Shown here: one piece after another, positions 4,516 through 59,559 of the stretch
How positions within the stretch are numbered: the first letter of the stretch is position 1
Layout of the letters: each line of letters opens with the position of its first letter
Assembly: GCF_021869535.1 (NCBI RefSeq)
Contig: NW_026262626.1
Location: 27,528,001-27,592,000 of the forward strand
Source: Mytilus californianus
Lineage: Eukaryota
Direction of reading: 5' to 3'
Length of the DNA: 64,000 nt
The notes under the pieces: generated by a model
What the model was told of the DNA's origin: nothing
Database searches by the model: none
What the model saw: only the letters and a program-made list of their open reading frames with translations
Translations under genes and position numbers: made by a program

Positions 4516-5646
4516 CTCGAATAAAAAAAGTTAAAAGAACAGACAACCAAACATTGAATCAACCGTGTGCTTCCTCAACATTTCACACAAGACAAACTTT
4601 CTGAGACTAATACTAGTAGCCTACTGTCTTTGATTCTGTGGGTTGAGGAGCATTAAATCATTAGTTTGATATAAAATACTATCGTTGAAATTCCATATTA
4701 AACTACTTAGGGGCGATCCTCTTAAAGTTAGCCCTCTTAGAGAGACCGTTGCAGACATACTTACAGAGCTTCTTATAACATTTAATTGACCTTTCTTGAG
4801 TTTTTCGAAATAAACATACGCTCTTTGTCATTTGATTGATTTTACTGATAATTAGTATATTTATCTTGATTTGAATTCCTTGCAAAAAAATTTAGTTACA
4901 ATATTAAAAATAAGTTTTTTTTTTCTTTTTTGTTTTTTTTTTTCAATACATGTTATGGAGTTATGATTTTTTTAAATTAGTTACGGTTATCTTTGATAGC
5001 TGATCTAATTTATTAATGATCATGTACGGCATATTTGATAGCCATCTTAAAAATATACTATAAATCAATTTCTGTTGAATAAATTAATCTGTTAAGTTCA
5101 GAAAAATATTTAAAAGGTGTGACGTCATTAACATTGTTAGCTCAAGTGTCGGACAATGATTTAGTTGCTAGCCCCAAAGTTAAAATCTGTGATTGGTATT
5201 TTGAAGTCAATATTAGAAATAAAGATTAACACAATCCATTCGATCCTCCTTGAATGGTTTTAACGTATAAGACTCTAAGACATATGAAGATCTAAGGCAT
5301 GCCATGTTTATTGATATATTGTGTTAAAATTATCAGTTTTAAGCTTGTTTAGTGAAAAAAAATTTATATATTTATTTTGTAATACCAATGTTTGAAATAT
5401 TGTTGCAAAAACATGCCATACCAGTTTAACAAGAAGAAACAGTATTTTACATCCTTAATGGCAATCATGTTTTATATGTTTATTGATTGATATACATTCT
5501 CATTGTTGAGTTGCTATAACAGTGAAAGCTGATTCGGCATGTTCTACGGTTGCCTATAATTGCTTACATCTATGACCACTTAATATGAACTCTGGTGGAT
5601 AGTTGTCTCACTGGCAATAATTCCACATATTTTTATATATATATTT

Positions 5647-53113: not shown

Positions 53114-54709
53114 TTAAAATTGTGTGAAATGCCGAAGCAAATTGCACAAGAGAAAAATAATAGATGTATACTGTGTCGTTTCAAAGTATATACTACGTTC
53201 CTCTACTATTTTTTGGAAAATGATTTTCCAATTTATCTTTTCCTTTTTATTAGAATTATTTCATATAAATATATTTAAAATCTCTGTTCCGTTCATCAAG
53301 CTTAAATGAAGTTCCAAAATATCACGACATGAATCAGTTATCAGCCATTTGTAGCTTGAACCTAACGTATTACATGTATATATATTTTAAATACAGAATT
53401 TTGCCTTTTAAATTTGATGGTCGTATCAAAAGCGAGGTATTATCCTCATTTGTCTACATTACGCTACATTACTTTTCCAACAGCGTCTGGAAAATCCCAT
53501 ATTATAAAAATCATCTGCCAAACAACTTTTGTCAACTAGAACCAAGCTCTGCAGGAATCTTTGTCTGTAAATACCTGAATGCATTTGGATTGTTTGTGTG
53601 TATCTTGATATCAAAATGAATACCATGGCCAAAATGTATTCCGATTGGCTGAAATTGCAAAGATATTCTGACGAATGTCCTGGCATATCGTTAGAACGAT
53701 TCACAAAAAGTGCTTTAATTATTTAAAGGTGTTGATGCCAATTCAAATTCACATAACCACCATCATTGATCATAGTTTAAAATAGAACCGCATGAACAGT
53801 TAATACAGTAACACTTAGTTTCTTCTCAGAAACTCTCTCACACATTGAAACCAAATCTTGCAAACAGAAATCCGACTGATCCGTTTTTGTTGCCAAACAA
53901 TTTAAGAAATGACCACTACGGTAAAGCATAATACAACCATACAGAAAATGCGTACAAACAGAAAACGTTTCAAACATCGTTGTATCAAATCATGTAAAAA
54001 GACACGTAAGGTGTTCACATACAAATTTCGATGCCTATCTGAAATCTAAATACTTATCAAAATTACCACGTTTATCAATTGACACTCCAGACGCGTGTGT
54101 CGTCTACATCAGAATTATCAGTGGTGCTCGAATCAAAAAGTTAGCAGACCAAGTCAAATACGAAATTGAAAACCAAAAGTTTTGAATAATTGTTAAAAAA
54201 CGGCTAAGTGTATATAAGCTTGTGAAAAAATCTTAGTGTTTAGAATGTTTCTACATTTTATAAACAATCAATCTACAGAAACGGCACGTTTCAATGATAG
54301 TTCATGTCAGTACAAAAGTGTTGAACATTTGGCTGCTTACGTCCATCAGCAGTTGCATCAACCCAGTGGTTGAAAAAAATCTATAAAAGATACATATATT
54401 GTCGCCACTGTAAAGCATAGTTTAACATTGGACCATATTTGAAATACATACAACAATTTTAATTTAAAACCGTCTCAAACATTGTCAAATCGTGAGCAAT
54501 TGATACTATACTAGTTTTCATTTTTTCTGTGATCTGAAATTAAAGAAGGCATTCAACATGAAACAAAGTTTAACATTTATACCAGGAGATTTATACAGGA
54601 GATTATATTTCCATATATTACTATCTAAATCATATGAAATACAGTATGAGAGTCCCCATGTACCATGACTCAAACATACTAATATAATTCCAACAATTAC
54701 TATCCACAT
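53114..54709 (-). pseudogene. Decayed gene-like unit: signal-peptide-like first exon plus a long disrupted exon-like block; product unidentified
   Basis: 54709-54583 reads MWIVIVGIILVCLSHGTWGLSYC.. and ends at a G|GT donor. Block 54039-53114 is bounded by ttcag and aag|gtaagt, is Cys/aromatic-rich, but has stops in all frames. Confidence 0.35.
54050..54395 (-). mobile_element. Roughly full-length (~350 nt) decayed retrozyme monomer with mutated hammerhead
   Basis: Hammerhead relic at 54085-54125 reads CTGATAA..GACAC acgc GTC, so both core boxes are mutated. The element begins and ends with related tatcaaa..tac sequence, consistent with one permuted monomer. Confidence 0.65.
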
Positions 54710-55124
54710 TTATATGTGTCCACACTGCTTCATGTTATAAGATAAATTAAGTACGGTTTCATTTAGACAAACTGTTTTGAGTTTAAGAAATCAGAGCTAC
54801 TTAACCTGTTTCATAATTGCAAAATTGGAAAATCCGAATCATGTGATATAGAAGTGCTTTCAAGTAGAAAAGTCCGTAGAAATGTATACTTCTTAACGAT
54901 TAACCAATTAAAGAGGGCGTTTGCTCAAAAGTAATGAATACACTTCTGGTTAAATTACATTCAGTAATAAATGACAGATCTTCAAAATTATGCAATGTCA
55001 AGGACATAAGCAAATATAATTCATTGATCAAAACTGAAGGCAAACACAAAATTTCTTTACTTATGCAGGAATGCTGTAATCAGTGAAGTTCGGACAAAAT
55101 TAGCACAAGGATACAAAGAACACA

Positions 55125-56153
55125 ATGAAAAAAATACTCGTTTGTTTTACTTTGATGTTTTTGTTGGAGGTACAATGTAAATGCCAGTGGAATTCATTTG
55201 GCCCTGGTGATAAAAGCTGGTACGAACAAGCGGATGGAAGATGGTCAGAATTTAGCTACAATCGTAACATGAAAACTTTTGACCATATACATACAGTATA
55301 TTCTAGTGAAAAAGCCGTTGTCATACAACAAGATGGGTTACTTCCTTTGATTTTAAATTCAAATGCAGCATACTATGGCAAGAACAAGTTTGCTTCTGGA
55401 AGATGGACTTCAACTGGGCGTTGGGAGGGTAATTGGTTTCCACAATATGGAGGCGGATCCGGATATTACTTACAATCGAATGACGATTGGAAGGAATACA
55501 GAAATGGATATTATGAGAAAACATTTCGACATATACAAACAATTAACGTTTCTGAATTTGCAGTTATTTTACATCAGCGTTTTATCTGGGCGTTCGTTTT
55601 GACTGATGACTGTGCCTATTACAATGGAATTCAGCAATTCTATGGAGAATGGAGACATTCTTGCCATTGGAAAGGTAAACGTAGTAATGGCATTGAACTA
55701 TCAGAGTTCAGAAGAATTTCACCTAATTCATGGCACGAATATACAAATGGGGACTACCTTAAAACATTCAATCACATTCAAACTGTTCAGAATGAAGGAG
55801 TTGTGGTGGTTATTCAACAAAATTTTCAATGTTTGAAACCCTTGATTTTGAGCCAAACGTCTGCTTATTATGATAATGTAAAATTTGCAAACGGACATTG
55901 GGACGATCAAAACACTCGATGGGTTGGATACCGTTTTAGTGGAGGGTCAGTTAAATTTGAAAAATTTGGGACAAATTGGAAAGAATATGAAAACGAAAAT
56001 TATTTAAAAACTTTCAATCATGTCAAACAGATTCGAAGTGATCGTGCAGTCGTTATTATGCAACAATACTGTTTTTGGCCGCTTATCTTAGATGAATTTG
56101 GCGCATCCTATAATGGTCTCGAATTTGCCTTGGGGAACTGGATCAATCAATAA
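55125..56153 (+). CDS. Uncharacterised secreted protein with four tandem ~82-aa aromatic-rich repeats, single coding exon
   Basis: 342-codon ORF in AT-rich DNA. N-terminus MKKILVCFTLMFLLEVQC is hydrophobic. KTF motifs fall at aa 50, 132, 213 and 295, each within W.EY.NG.Y.KTF.H(I/V)...VV(I)..Q...LIL....A.Y....F..G.W. A pyrimidine-rich acceptor (ttctttacttatgcag, ~55053-55068) suggests a 5'UTR intron. AATAAA overlaps the stop codon. Confidence 0.88.
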   Translation: MKKILVCFTLMFLLEVQCKCQWNSFGPGDKSWYEQADGRWSEFSYNRNMKTFDHIHTVYSSEKAVVIQQDGLLPLILNSNAAYYGKNKFASGRWTSTGRWEGNWFPQYGGGSGYYLQSNDDWKEYRNGYYEKTFRHIQTINVSEFAVILHQRFIWAFVLTDDCAYYNGIQQFYGEWRHSCHWKGKRSNGIELSEFRRISPNSWHEYTNGDYLKTFNHIQTVQNEGVVVVIQQNFQCLKPLILSQTSAYYDNVKFANGHWDDQNTRWVGYRFSGGSVKFEKFGTNWKEYENENYLKTFNHVKQIRSDRAVVIMQQYCFWPLILDEFGASYNGLEFALGNWINQ

Positions 56154-57189
56154 AAAAAAAATTAAATGCACAAAGAAAACTCTGACGAGTAAGGCATGCA
56201 AAACAAAACATTTATAAGTGCCAATTTTATTTACAAACATTTTATCATTATATTCATATAGTGACATTAACCATAACATTTTATTTTTTTAATGCACCTA
56301 CCTAACATACGGCTAAATCATATACCATTCGAAAGCACATCATCTGTACTATCTTTTTTGCCCGGTGTCAAATATTCGTGTATGGTGCAGTTTTCGTCAA
56401 ATCACGATGAAAATTCTTTAAGTTTGTCCGTTTTAGAAATCAATGAAACCAAAACGAACTTAAATTATCATACCTTTGACGAGATTTGTGATCTCCTATA
56501 ATTTTTGTTATAGTGATATACATGTAATTAAAACTTACGATTGGGGTCATTTATTCAAAACTCAATAATTAACTACTTTTAAAGTTTTCAAACATTTAAA
56601 GTGGTCTTTAGTATTATGTTTACTAAAAAAGAGTTTTTAATGTTACAAAATGGTCTCATTCCTCATTTCATAATTTCTCACCGATTCTCTACATCCCCAT
56701 CCCAAACACCCGACAAAAAAAGAAATGTGATTGACAATAATATAGGAATTCATAAAATTTCGAACAAGTTGATAATATATAATTATGTTAGCACATTGTG
56801 CTCGTATGCATGTGTGTTTGTGTGTGTTGGGAGGGTTCTTCGTTTATTTCTTGAGCCAGACTTTTTTCAATACATATCTGACAATTGTTATAATTTTTAA
56901 AATTTAAATAAATCTTCTAAATTTTTATGGCTCTTGACTCAAGAAAATGTAACTCTTATGGAAAAACTGGGCTGTTATATTTGTGACTGTTTTGAATTAA
57001 GGAGATCAGGTATGCATATTGACACTAAGTCAAGTAAATGATTTGAGAATGAATGCTCATAATGTAATTTTATTCTTTTATTCACAATATATATGTGGTT
57101 TTTGGCTCTGATTCTGACCAATGCTAATATACTAAATATATATATATATTCAAGTGATTATTATTGTTGTTGTTACCAATTATGTAAAT

Positions 57190-57265
57190 CAATTGTATCT
57201 GATTTTATGCCCTTTATGGGCCCTGTAATTTGGGAAATAAAAATATTCTATTCTATTCTATTCTA
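57190..57265 (+). mobile_element. Probable LINE 3' tail fragment ending in (ATTCT)n
   Basis: aaataaaaatattctattctattctattct: a polyA-signal-like motif followed by a short tandem tail. A similar architecture occurs at 6030-6070 with (GAATCT)n. Confidence 0.35.
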
Positions 57266-57379
57266 ATTTGATTCCTATCTTCATAATGGACTAATGAGAT
57301 ATTTGACAATTTCGAGTTCAGCGAATATTAAATGGCAAAAGCGTACCTGATAAATACATATATACATATCTCCATAAGT

Positions 57380-57700
57380 GAAAACAAACTGACAACGCCA
57401 TGGCCAAAAATAAAAAGACAAACAGACAAATAATAGTACAGATGACACAACATAGAAAACCAAAGACTAAGCAACACGAACCCCACCAAAAACTGGGGGT
57501 GATCTCAGGTGCTTCGGAAGGGTAAGCAGATCCTGCTCCACATGTGGCACTCGTCGTGTTGCTTATGTTATTACAAATCCGGTAAATAGTCTAATTCGGT
57601 AAGTCACATTCATGAAAAGGGAGGGTAGTGTAGTTACGACATAAGGAACATATCCGATATCATCTGTGAAACGGTTATTCCATAACGGTCAACCAACTTA
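57380..57700 (-). mobile_element. 3' end fragment of second PLE-type family
   Basis: Aligns by eye to 40445-40795. Confidence 0.65.
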
Positions 57701-57735
57701 TAAACATGTATCTAGAATAAGAGTTTATATTCCAA

Positions 57736-58115
57736 TAGGTCTGCATGCAGACAGACCTGAATGAAAAGTGCAAAAAAAAAATAAACAACTTAGGTCTACA
57801 TACAACAGGTTTGTATGCAGGCATACAGACCTGAAGTATTGCCAAAATAAATTATTTTGAAGGTTCTACATATACCAGATTTGTATGCAGGCATACAGAT
57901 TTGACAAATTCTAGTATACGCATAGAGTGAAAGTTTAGCATACGCCAGGTCGGTATGCATGCATACAGACTAAGAAATGCCATTTATTATCTCAAATTAA
58001 AGTTCGGCATACACCAGATTAGTATGCAAGCATACAGACGTAAGATATGTAAATTTATTAGGTAGATGAGATTTCAACATACACCAGGTCCGTATGCAGG
58101 AATAAAGACCTGACA
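57736..58115. repeat. Array of six 28-bp palindromes at 69-70 bp period with variable AT-rich spacers
   Basis: Unit starts at 57736, 57806, 57876, 57946, 58015 and 58085; consensus CAGGTCTGTATGC-AG-GCATACAGACCTG. Confidence 0.8.
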
Positions 58116-58203
58116 AATACAAGTAAGTGAAAAAATACTTAATTTAGCATAACATTCACTTAAACATCTATAATAAAGATGGGTAATTGATATGTTATAT
58201 ATA

Positions 58204-58994
58204 TGTTCCAGACCATATGAGTATTTGAACCGTACGCGTACGGTCCGACCAAACGCGTACGGTCGGACCGTATGAGTATACTCATATGGTCTAGAACGAG
58301 CTGTACCATACATGTATTTAGACCGTATGGGCTAATTTTAGACAGATATTTATCAAAAATCTTTTATTGAGTTTTACAAATGAATATAATTACAATTAGA
58401 TGAATAAAGTGAATAAATCAACATGTTTTGTTAAGGCATGTTCCTTTGCATTTCCATCTCTTGCTAGCAAGAGAAAAACTTGAGGCAATGAAATTCCTTC
58501 TGTTTTTGAATGTGCAGTTTCAATTTTGCGTGTCAAAAGTTCTATATCACCCATATCGTAACAAGAGTTTAATATGCCAAATTCACATGATAGTTTGATC
58601 AAAGTTGCATCTTGACCAATAATATCATCAACCCTACATAATAATCGGGGAAAATCCTATAAACAACTGGTATTCTTACAGTAACAAAGCAACCTTTCAA
58701 TTTCATGTATTACTGACATGTTAAATACAGGAGATTAACAAATTAAATTAACGTGACTTTTTCACATAGTTAAAATATTAAGTTTTTATTTCAATTACAA
58801 TTGGACTATTTATAATAATTCGAGATTTCTGTTATGTTGATCCGTAATATACATTGTATCTTATAAACTTGTCCGACTTCTTAAAATTAGGCAGACCGTA
58901 CGCGTAACAGTCCGACCGTATGCGTATTTTGAAAAAGTACGCAAACGGTCCAGATCGTACGCGTACGGTCCAAATACTCATATGGTCTGGAACA
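58204..58994. mobile_element. MITE with long TIRs, TA flanks and subterminal CCGTACGCGTACGG palindromes
   Basis: TA|TGTTCCAGACCATATGAGTATTTG ... CAAATACTCATATGGTCTGGAACA|TA. Confidence 0.8.
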
Positions 58995-59559
58995 TATATA
59001 TTTCAAAGATGACATAAAAGTATAACAAAAATGCAGAATAAGTAATGTATGAAGGTTTTATTGTCTCAACTTTTTTCTGATTGTTGAAATAGTTTATTCT
59101 AGCATCATATGAAAAAGGGTAATGCTAAAATGATGTGGTTTTGAATTTGCATTAACGAAAAAAGACCCAAAATCTTGCAAAAAAATGACAAGCAAATATA
59201 AATAATGCAATACAGAGACTTTTTAACGCGAATTATGACAATCAAGCCAAAAGATGTAGCTTTTCACACAAAAATGAGTTAAGTGGCATATGAGAATTTC
59301 TAATTTTAGATGAGAAAGTATTTGTTATAATCTTAATCACTATGAAAACAATCATTTATGTCAACAAAGAAAAACAAAATTGCATATAGACATTCTATAG
59401 ACAAAGCACATAAGCAAAAATGACGGAAATTAAAGAATATCAAACCTGACCATTGCACAAAAACGCAAAAGCGGGATATATAAATACAAAGCCACGTCAA
59501 AAGAATAACACTCAAAATAGACTTAACGGTAAACATGTTATATTTATAATATTTTTTTT

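What the first reader, a model, noticed from the sequence alone, without database searches (positions are those of the whole stretch)
57736..58115. CRISPR-like geometry in an animal genome: six palindromic repeats at a 70-bp period with non-repeating spacers
Seen: a 28-bp hairpin (CAGGTCTGTATGC-AG-GCATACAGACCTG consensus, preceded by a semi-conserved CATACAC) starts at 57736, 57806, 57876, 57946, 58015 and 58085. The ~33 nt between units are AT-rich and largely unrelated, while the spacing is held to within 1 bp. Ordinary minisatellites decay evenly; here only the palindrome and the period appear conserved. Inference: a phased array of dimeric protein-binding sites (transposase/Rep or transcription factor) or a multi-hairpin RNA. 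No cas genes are present and I do not call it CRISPR.
Basis: partly seen in the sequence, partly recalled or inferred. Interest (0 to 1): 0.7.

Follow-up and report, generated by a model that had tools for sequence, protein, structure and literature searches.

The report
Palindrome repeats inside a mussel transposon
The six evenly spaced palindromes are real, but they are the repeat block near one end of a broken copy of a roughly 5.4-kb non-coding jumping gene found about 70-130 times in this mussel-like genome, so this is an ordinary transposon feature, probably docking sites for its enzyme, and has nothing to do with CRISPR.

Summary
In register, the roughly 43-nt motif is 73% identical between units and the spacers 38.5%, against 32% expected by chance.

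The "unique spacers" are not unique. The whole block, spacers included, recurs at 85-90% identity in other copies of one interspersed element. Between copies, motif and spacer decay equally (89.8% vs 88.7%, p=0.5).

The host is a cut-and-paste DNA transposon:
- It has 33-bp terminal inverted repeats.
- 13 of 14 copies carry identical 4-bp target-site duplications of varying sequence.
- It is about 5.4 kb long with no coding capacity.
- TIR pairs give about 70 copies, and some are 98-99.8% identical.

The 5' end carries three of the same 70-bp units in inverted orientation. The arrays are therefore subterminal repeats at both ends, the classic layout of transposase-binding sites. That function is inferred, not shown.

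The window copy is a remnant. Its 5' part is missing, and a 789-bp element is nested at 58205-58993. The tail and 3' TIR lie at 58994-59322.

The superfamily is unresolved: the features fit Sola and rule out piggyBac, Kolobok, Ginger and Helentron/HINE. No autonomous partner was found. Interest is low: a new member of a known kind.

The parts
57702..58204 (+). Segment of the transposon copy that carries the array (3' subterminal repeat block). It holds six 70-bp units plus the start of a seventh. Its 5' edge is a truncation point.
   Evidence: Aligns at 85-88% over its whole length to copies on other contigs, and at 97% to a local duplicate. It corresponds to positions 1501-2003 of the reverse-complemented L003 copy.
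57724..57793 (+). Unit 1, a degenerate unit with a shorter palindrome, AGGTCTG..CAGACCT.
57794..57863 (+). Unit 2, the best-preserved hairpin: CAGGTTTGTATGC-AG-GCATACAGACCTG.
   Evidence: DNA fold -8.5 kcal/mol, z=-4.9.
57864..57933 (+). Unit 3. This unit type is the one amplified in the younger subfamily.
57934..58002 (+). Unit 4 (69 bp).
58003..58072 (+). Unit 5.
58073..58142 (+). Unit 6, the last full unit. The start of a seventh (TTTAGCATA) follows at 58143.
58205..58993 (.). An unrelated 789-bp TIR element nested inside the transposon, inserted into its (TA)n tract. Its TIRs are about 40 bp (GTTCCAGACCATATGAGTATTTG...). This accounts for the large palindrome at 58205-58297.
   Evidence: Other copies run straight from 58204 to 58994. 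TIRs shown, inverted repeats.
58994..59322 (+). The 3' tail of the transposon copy.
   Evidence: 87-93% identical to at least 40 other copies. Collinear with L003 and L005.
59290..59322 (+). The 3' terminal inverted repeat, ...GAGAATTTCTAATTTTAGATGAGAAAGTATT.
   Evidence: It is the reverse complement of the 5' TIR seen in full-length copies. The TIR pattern hit at C46:27587302-27587322 is window 59302-59322.
59323..59326 (.). The 3' copy of the 4-bp target-site duplication (TGTT). Its 5' partner was lost with the 5' part of the element.
   Evidence: Position deduced from the 4-bp TSDs of 14 full-length copies. Sequence.
57376..57698 (.). Fragment of an unrelated, very abundant young repeat that abuts the truncated 5' edge. 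It is not part of the array element.
   Evidence: 98-99% identical to dozens of scored places out of 5012 candidates. It is absent from the 12-kb-downstream duplicate, which keeps more of the transposon there.

Best explanation
The array is the 3' subterminal repeat block of a decayed, 5'-truncated and interrupted copy of a non-autonomous cut-and-paste (class II, TIR) DNA transposon.

Full-length copies are about 5.4 kb. They have perfect or near-perfect 33-bp terminal inverted repeats (AACACGTTCTCATCTAAAATTAGAAATTCTCAT), make 4-bp target-site duplications of no fixed sequence, and encode nothing.

They carry roughly 70-bp units at both ends, each with a conserved core of about 43-48 nt: GCATACAC, then the bipartite palindrome CAGGTC-N-GTATGC NN GCATAC-A-GACCTG, then ACAAATAC. 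There are three units about 230 bp inside the 5' end. At the 3' end, 6-9 good units plus about 5 degenerate ones end about 420 bp inside the terminus. The two arrays point in opposite directions.

Inferred mechanism (my estimate about 0.55-0.6): the units are cis-acting binding sites for the transposase, or an accessory protein, of a still unidentified autonomous partner. The protein would bind each palindrome as a dimer and help pair or mark the two ends. This is how subterminal repeats work in En/Spm, Ac and P elements.

Selection for transposition in master copies would keep the motif while the spacers drift. Once a copy is inserted, everything decays neutrally, and the window copy is in that state.
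For: Shown directly:
- The whole array, spacers included, is one piece of an interspersed repeat. Copies on other contigs are 85-88% identical. The array query gave 127 first-look candidates and the tail query 76.
- The element has defined ends. The 5' end AACACGTTCTCATCTAAAAT... is the reverse complement of the 3' end. The TIR pattern hits 69 forward and 72 reverse places, against 4-6 for the control. Most hits lie in inward-facing pairs 4.6-5.6 kb apart.
- 13 of 14 copies with both ends have identical 4-bp flanks: TTAA, TTAT, TACT, AAAA, AGAG, CTAT, ACAG, GTAT, CGCT, GTAA, TTTG, TAAG, CGAT. One differs at one base.
- The 5' subterminal region carries three units at 70-71 bp spacing in inverted orientation. 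It aligns to the 3' array at 71-75% over about 220 bp, through the spacers.
- There is no ORF over 102-172 aa and no Pfam hit in five long copies.
- Some copies are 98.3-99.8% identical, which indicates recent mobility.
- Between units the motif is 73% identical and the spacers 38.5%. Between copies the figures are 89.8% and 88.7%, p=0.5.
- The palindrome pattern has 702 genome hits against 0 for the control. Most listed hits lie at family copies already located.

Inferred: that the units bind a protein, by analogy with subterminal repeats of well-studied TIR transposons (my own knowledge).
Against: - No autonomous partner or transposase was found, so neither the binding protein nor the superfamily is known.
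- The motif has no similarity to the TIR itself.
- The two arrays sit at unequal distances from their termini, about 230 bp and about 420 bp.
- A 70-bp period is 6.7 helical turns, so neighbouring sites are not on the same face of the helix.
- Higher motif conservation between units could come from repeated unit turnover or gene conversion rather than selection. Array remodelling is seen: units 4 and 5 are lost and unit 3 is amplified in the young subfamily.
- I could not check Repbase or Dfam.
Confidence: 0.85

Rival explanations
1. The array is a functionless internal minisatellite that the transposon merely carries. The palindromic part looks conserved only because of recurrent unequal crossing-over or gene conversion, or because palindromes promote slippage. 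No protein reads it.
For: Unit number and composition change between subfamilies, with one unit type amplified to 6-7 near-identical copies. Spacers retain traces of common origin. There is no post-insertion constraint. Tandem repeats carried by bivalve mobile elements are common (PMC7492417).
Against: The same units occur at both ends in inverted orientation, and the motif is kept there too, including the flanking GCATACAC and GAAATAC. Simple turnover would homogenise spacers as well as motifs, yet in the older subfamily the motif is 73% identical and the spacers are near chance. The unit length stays 69-71 bp despite spacer divergence.
Confidence: 0.3
2. The array has been taken over by the host as a cluster of transcription-factor or insulator sites that acts on neighbouring genes.
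For: The sites are palindromic, dimer-type and regularly spaced. The copy lies about 1.6 kb from a gene-like exon noted at 55125-56153.
Against: Palindromes in dispersed copies decay exactly as fast as spacers and flanks. In the window copy five of six hairpins are already degraded. The copy is truncated and interrupted.
Confidence: 0.03
3. The array is transcribed into a multi-hairpin RNA, for example a small-RNA precursor.
For: The units can form hairpins on paper.
Against: Stems are at most 13 bp, too short for miRNA-type precursors, and are mostly broken in this copy. No Rfam family matches the array; the only two matches in 57000-59500 are far below gathering score and lie in the nested insert. 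The left-arm position 7 varies (G, A, C, T) while its partner stays A, so there is no compensatory change.
Confidence: 0.03
4. The element is a Helentron/HINE-type rolling-circle element, the known carrier of satellite-like arrays in bivalves.
For: Bivalve HINEs carry short central tandem-repeat arrays between two flanking modules, and have palindromes near the 3' end (PMC7492417).
Against: This element has perfect 33-bp terminal (not subterminal) inverted repeats and 4-bp target-site duplications. Rolling-circle elements do not make such duplications. Repeat arrays sit at both ends in inverted orientation, not in one central array. I saw no microsatellite-ended left module or 3' terminal palindrome of the HINE kind.
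Confidence: 0.02

Closest known systems
Subterminal repeat arrays of TIR DNA transposons, such as the En/Spm (CACTA) TNPA-binding 12-bp motifs, the Ac/Ds subterminal AAACGG repeats and the P-element internal repeats (from my own knowledge)
   Same: A short motif is repeated many times just inside both ends, in opposite orientation at the two ends, separate from the TIR itself. It is kept in mobile lineages and decays in dead copies.
   Different: Here the unit is long (70 bp, with a conserved core of about 43-48 nt), the core is itself a 28-bp palindrome, and the spacing is strictly regular. Protein binding is not shown. The TSD is 4 bp, against 3 bp for CACTA, 8 bp for hAT and 8 bp for P.
Sola superfamily of DNA transposons (DDD transposase, 4-bp TSD, 2-9 kb, TIRs 11-1124 bp; PMC10741241 citing Bao et al. 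2009; present in bivalves, PMC10294476)
   Same: A 4-bp target-site duplication, element size and TIR length within the reported ranges, and a host group in which Sola1 and Sola2 elements are known.
   Different: No transposase is linked to this family, so the defining protein is untested. I could not compare the termini with Sola1/2/3 termini because the papers and Repbase were not available.
Helentron-associated interspersed elements (HINE: Cg_HINE, pearl, DTC84, MgE) that carry satellite-like arrays in bivalves (PMC7492417)
   Same: A non-autonomous bivalve mobile element that carries a short tandem-repeat array dispersed through the genome. Array copy number varies between copies.
   Different: HINEs have subterminal inverted repeats, a left-module microsatellite, one central array, a 3' palindrome and no TSD. 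This element has true TIRs, 4-bp TSDs and arrays at both ends.
Foldback-type and other mussel transposons with end-motif arrays noted earlier in this genome (s1-342912, s1-302588; AI notes, not checked by me)
   Same: The same genome and the same general layout, with regularly spaced motifs or palindromes lining both ends of a TIR element.
   Different: They are different families: a 20-mer motif in a 7.9-kb foldback, and 21-bp-phased palindromes in an IS3EU-type element. Periods and target-site duplications also differ.
CRISPR arrays
   Same: Regular alternation of a partly palindromic repeat with dissimilar intervening sequence.
   Different: This is an animal genome with no cas genes. The 'spacers' are fixed parts of a multi-copy transposon and are related to one another. 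The repeats are only about 73% alike.

Membership tests
Class II cut-and-paste (TIR) DNA transposon, non-autonomous | Terminal inverted repeats at the exact ends of the repeated unit | tested here: met
   33 of 33 bases match between the two ends of L070. The same termini occur in at least 14 copies. The genome has 141 TIR hits against 4-6 for the control, mostly in inward-facing pairs.
Class II cut-and-paste (TIR) DNA transposon, non-autonomous | Target-site duplication of fixed length flanking each copy | tested here: met
   13 of 14 copies have identical 4-bp flanks and 1 of 14 has one mismatch.
Class II cut-and-paste (TIR) DNA transposon, non-autonomous | Multiple dispersed copies with unrelated flanks | tested here: met
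   Copies lie on many contigs.
Class II cut-and-paste (TIR) DNA transposon, non-autonomous | No transposase gene in the element, and an autonomous partner with the same ends elsewhere | tested here: inconclusive
   Lack of coding capacity is shown.
Sola superfamily | 4-bp TSD | tested here: met
   Criterion taken from PMC10741241.
Sola superfamily | Sola-type DDD transposase | not testable with these tools
   No autonomous copy is in hand. Earlier notes report Sola-like transposases in this genome (s1-282038, s1-328215), but nothing links them to these ends.
Sola superfamily | Termini that match those of Sola1, Sola2 or Sola3 | not tested
   The reference termini were not available.
piggyBac / Kolobok | TTAA target-site duplication | tested here: not met
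   Only 1 of 14 duplications is TTAA.
Ginger | TG...CA termini | tested here: not met
   The termini are AA...TT. Criterion taken from PMC10741241.
Helentron / HINE | No TSD; subterminal inverted repeats with a 3' palindrome; a single central tandem array after a microsatellite-ended left module | tested here: not met
   4-bp TSDs, true terminal IRs and arrays at both ends. Criteria taken from PMC7492417.
CRISPR array | Near-identical direct repeats separated by unique spacers of foreign origin, with cas genes, in a prokaryote | tested here: not met
   Repeats are about 73% alike. The spacers recur in every copy of the transposon and are related to one another. The genome is a 1.65-Gb eukaryote.
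Satellite / minisatellite DNA | Head-to-tail copies derived from one unit | tested here: met
   TRF reports a period of 70. Spacer homology. Homogeneous expanded arrays in the young subfamily. The array exists only as a short block inside the transposon, and no long arrays appeared among the listed hits.

The most novel reading that the evidence does not exclude
The 70-bp units are a true docking platform, with a dimer bound at each palindrome and arrays at both ends, for the transposase of a recently active 4-bp-TSD (possibly Sola-type) transposon of Mytilus. That would give the first cis-element map for that little-studied superfamily, and a candidate active element in a bivalve.
Probability: 0.4. 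Interest if true: 0.35.

Novelty: new member of a known kind. Interest (0 to 1): 0.2.

Why it matters
The main value is as a correction. A pattern that looks CRISPR-like in raw sequence is a standard transposon feature, and the 'spacers' carry no information.

There is modest positive value as well. The family is now fully delimited: TIRs, 4-bp TSD, arrays at both ends, several subfamilies, and some copies 98-99.8% identical. That makes it a usable entry for mussel repeat libraries. It also points to a possibly still active DNA transposon system in a bivalve, with an unusually clear candidate set of protein-binding sites.

Tried and rejected
- CRISPR-like system: rejected (see the membership test).
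- LTR or LINE 3' end: considered because the 3' end is constant and some copies look 5'-truncated. Rejected once the 5' TIR and the TSDs were found.
- Helitron/Helentron: considered because of the bivalve literature and the palindrome at 58205-58297. That palindrome belongs to a separate nested element, and the TSDs and TIRs argue against it.
- Apparent left ends at L003 position 470 and at L051r position 5034 were indels or insertions, not the true terminus.
- The longer TIR pairs examined (11.5 kb and 7.5 kb) are ordinary copies with nested, non-coding insertions. They are not autonomous elements.
- ORF scans against Pfam gave nothing, and Rfam gave nothing relevant.
- The papers by Bao et al. 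2009 and Yuan & Wessler 2011 are not held. Superfamily criteria come from secondary sources and my own knowledge.
- Earlier-findings look-ups by sequence and by some word sets returned nothing.

Full report
**The observation.** The region 57724-58142 holds six head-to-tail units with start-to-start spacing of 70, 70, 70, 69 and 70 bp. TRF reports a 70-bp period. Each unit carries GCATACAC, then a 28-bp palindrome with consensus CAGGTCTGTATGC-AG-GCATACAGACCTG, then ACAAATAC. The 18-nt core occurs 8 times in the window at up to 3 mismatches, all inside the array, against 0.02 expected. In register, units 2-6 are 73% identical over the motif and 38.5% over the spacers, where chance for that composition is 32%. 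In this copy only unit 2 still folds as a strong DNA hairpin.

**The array is part of a repeat, spacers included.** A search of the window's own genome (1.65 Gb, 175 contigs, 32% GC) found window 57702-58204 at 85-88% identity on other contigs, and at 97% in a duplicate 12 kb downstream. In the multiple alignment every spacer is conserved between copies. The array query gave 127 first-look candidates. Between copies, motif columns are 89.8% identical and spacer columns 88.7% (Mann-Whitney p=0.5); the adjacent non-array flank is 90%. After insertion, then, the palindromes are under no more constraint than anything else. The spacers are neither unique nor foreign.

**Finding the host element.**
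- Homology continues to the right for 329 bp after a 789-bp interruption (window 58994-59322) and ends at a sharp, shared 3' terminus...GATGAGAACGTGTT.
- To the left, several apparent ends proved to be indels or nested insertions.
- Coordinate bookkeeping showed that an upstream module keeps a fixed distance of about 4.4-5.1 kb from the 3' end in many copies. Sequence further left in that copy belongs to other repeats.
- Alignment of the copies that reach furthest gave the true 5' terminus, AACACGTTCTCATCTAAAAT..., which is the reverse complement of the 3' terminus.
- A full-length copy, L070:101-5478, is 5378 bp with a perfect 33-bp TIR.
- The TIR pattern has 69 forward and 72 reverse hits in the genome, against 4-6 for the control. 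Most are in inward-facing pairs 4.6-5.6 kb apart.
- Of 14 copies for which I could read both flanks, 13 have identical 4-bp duplications of varied sequence and one differs at one base.

This is a cut-and-paste DNA transposon. Five long copies have no ORF above 102-172 aa and no Pfam hit, so it is non-autonomous. Two copies are 98.3-99.8% identical, so at least one subfamily moved recently. The window copy belongs to an older subfamily.

**Arrays at both ends.** About 230 bp inside the 5' TIR there are three units at 70-71 bp spacing, reading CAGGNCTGTATGCC-N-GCATACGAACCTG-GTGTATGC. This is the 3' unit in reverse complement, including the flanking GCATACAC and the GAAATAC that follows the palindrome. 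BLAST aligns the 5' block to the 3' array in inverted orientation at 71-75% over about 220 bp. The 3' array holds 6-9 good units, preceded by about five degenerate ones, and ends about 420 bp from the terminus. Unit number varies at both ends. One copy has a fourth 5' unit. A younger subfamily has lost units 4 and 5 and amplified a unit-3 type into a run of similar copies (7 in L070), whose spacers are alike. The palindrome pattern has 702 genome hits against 0 for the control, and most listed hits fall at family copies already located by other queries.

**Origin of the units.** On the family's majority sequence, spacers u1-u2 (z=7.1), u3-u6 (z=4.2) and u4 with a 5' unit (z=3.6) align significantly. 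The units therefore arose by duplication of whole 70-bp units, and the spacers then diverged while the motif did not. The arm position I call L7 varies (G, A, C, T) while its partner stays A. There is thus no compensatory change that would point to selection for a hairpin as such.

**How it most likely works.** What is shown: a TIR transposon with regular, oppositely oriented motif arrays inside both ends; motif conservation within the element but not after insertion; and array turnover between subfamilies. What I infer, by analogy with En/Spm, Ac and P-element subterminal repeats (my own knowledge): the units are binding sites for the partner transposase or an accessory protein, probably bound as a dimer on each palindrome. 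I put about 0.55-0.6 on this. The main rival, at about 0.3, is a passively carried minisatellite whose motif similarity reflects turnover or conversion. Host exaptation, a hairpin RNA (no Rfam match over the array) and a Helentron origin are each unlikely.

**Superfamily.** A 4-bp TSD that is not TTAA rules out piggyBac and Kolobok. AA...TT termini rule out Ginger, which has TG...CA (PMC10741241). From my own knowledge, the TSD length also argues against hAT, Mutator, P, Merlin, Transib, PIF and Tc1/mariner. Academ is reported with 3-bp TSDs (PMC5199201). Sola elements are defined by 4-bp TSDs, are 2-9 kb long and have variable TIRs (PMC10741241), and Sola1 and Sola2 occur in bivalves (PMC10294476). 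Sola is therefore the best fit, but without a transposase membership is untested. I cannot exclude the Chapaev-type CMC elements.

**State of the window copy.**
- Only the last 15% or so of the element survives: 57702-58204 plus 58994-59322.
- The 5' edge abuts a 323-bp fragment of an unrelated, very abundant young repeat (57376-57698). The 97%-identical duplicate downstream keeps a further 0.7 kb of the transposon at that point.
- A 789-bp element with TIRs of about 40 bp sits in the transposon's (TA)n tract at 58205-58993. It accounts for the large palindrome at 58205-58297.

**Limits.**
- The species is not given. An earlier AI note calls it the California mussel. The assembly size and contig count agree with my memory of that genome, but I did not verify it.
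- Expression could not be examined.
- Repbase and Dfam were not available.

**Verdict.** Earlier notes on other DNA of this genome describe different transposon families with motif arrays at both ends (s1-342912, s1-302588). I have not checked those notes, and they are not evidence for this one.

Noticed in passing
window 57376-57698: The 3' part of a very abundant, very young repeat: 98-99% identity to dozens of scored places out of 5012 first-look candidates. It ends sharply at ...CGGTCAACCAAC. It replaces about 2.3 kb that is present in the downstream duplicate.
   Followed up: partly
window 58205-58993: A 789-bp non-coding TIR element with TIRs of about 40 bp (GTTCCAGACCATATGAGTATTTGRACCGTACGCGTACG). 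Its left end forms a 93-bp foldback and it contains ACCGTACGCGTACGGT palindromes. It is inserted in a (TA)n tract, and its TSD is not resolved.
   Followed up: partly
window 54666-59384 and L055:1-7484 (C46:27592001-27599484): A tandem segmental duplication with a period of about 12 kb and 96.6-97.9% identity. It includes the gene-like repeat exon noted at 55125-56153 and the transposon remnant. The two copies differ by the replacement at 57376-57698.
   Followed up: partly
L057:2523-5244 (C99:113497322-113500043): A 1.36-kb tandem duplication (98.3%) that spans the 5' TIR and 5' array of one transposon copy, so that copy has two 5' ends.
   Followed up: no
G000 C1:92566291-92571661 and C1:92571863-92577229: Two full-length copies of the transposon in the same orientation, only about 200 bp apart. 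This could be a local hop or a duplication.
   Followed up: no
L067+L068 (C110:51545422-51556948): A young copy of the transposon that carries a 6.1-kb nested insertion. About 13 bp of the host element is duplicated at the two junctions, and the insertion has no ORF above 117 aa. The inserted element was not identified.
   Followed up: no
L070 and listed hits: In the young subfamily, perfect palindromes alternate between two variants (GTATGCAGGCATAC and GTATGCTGGCATAC) at 140-bp spacing. This suggests the array grew by duplication of a 140-bp dimer.
   Followed up: no
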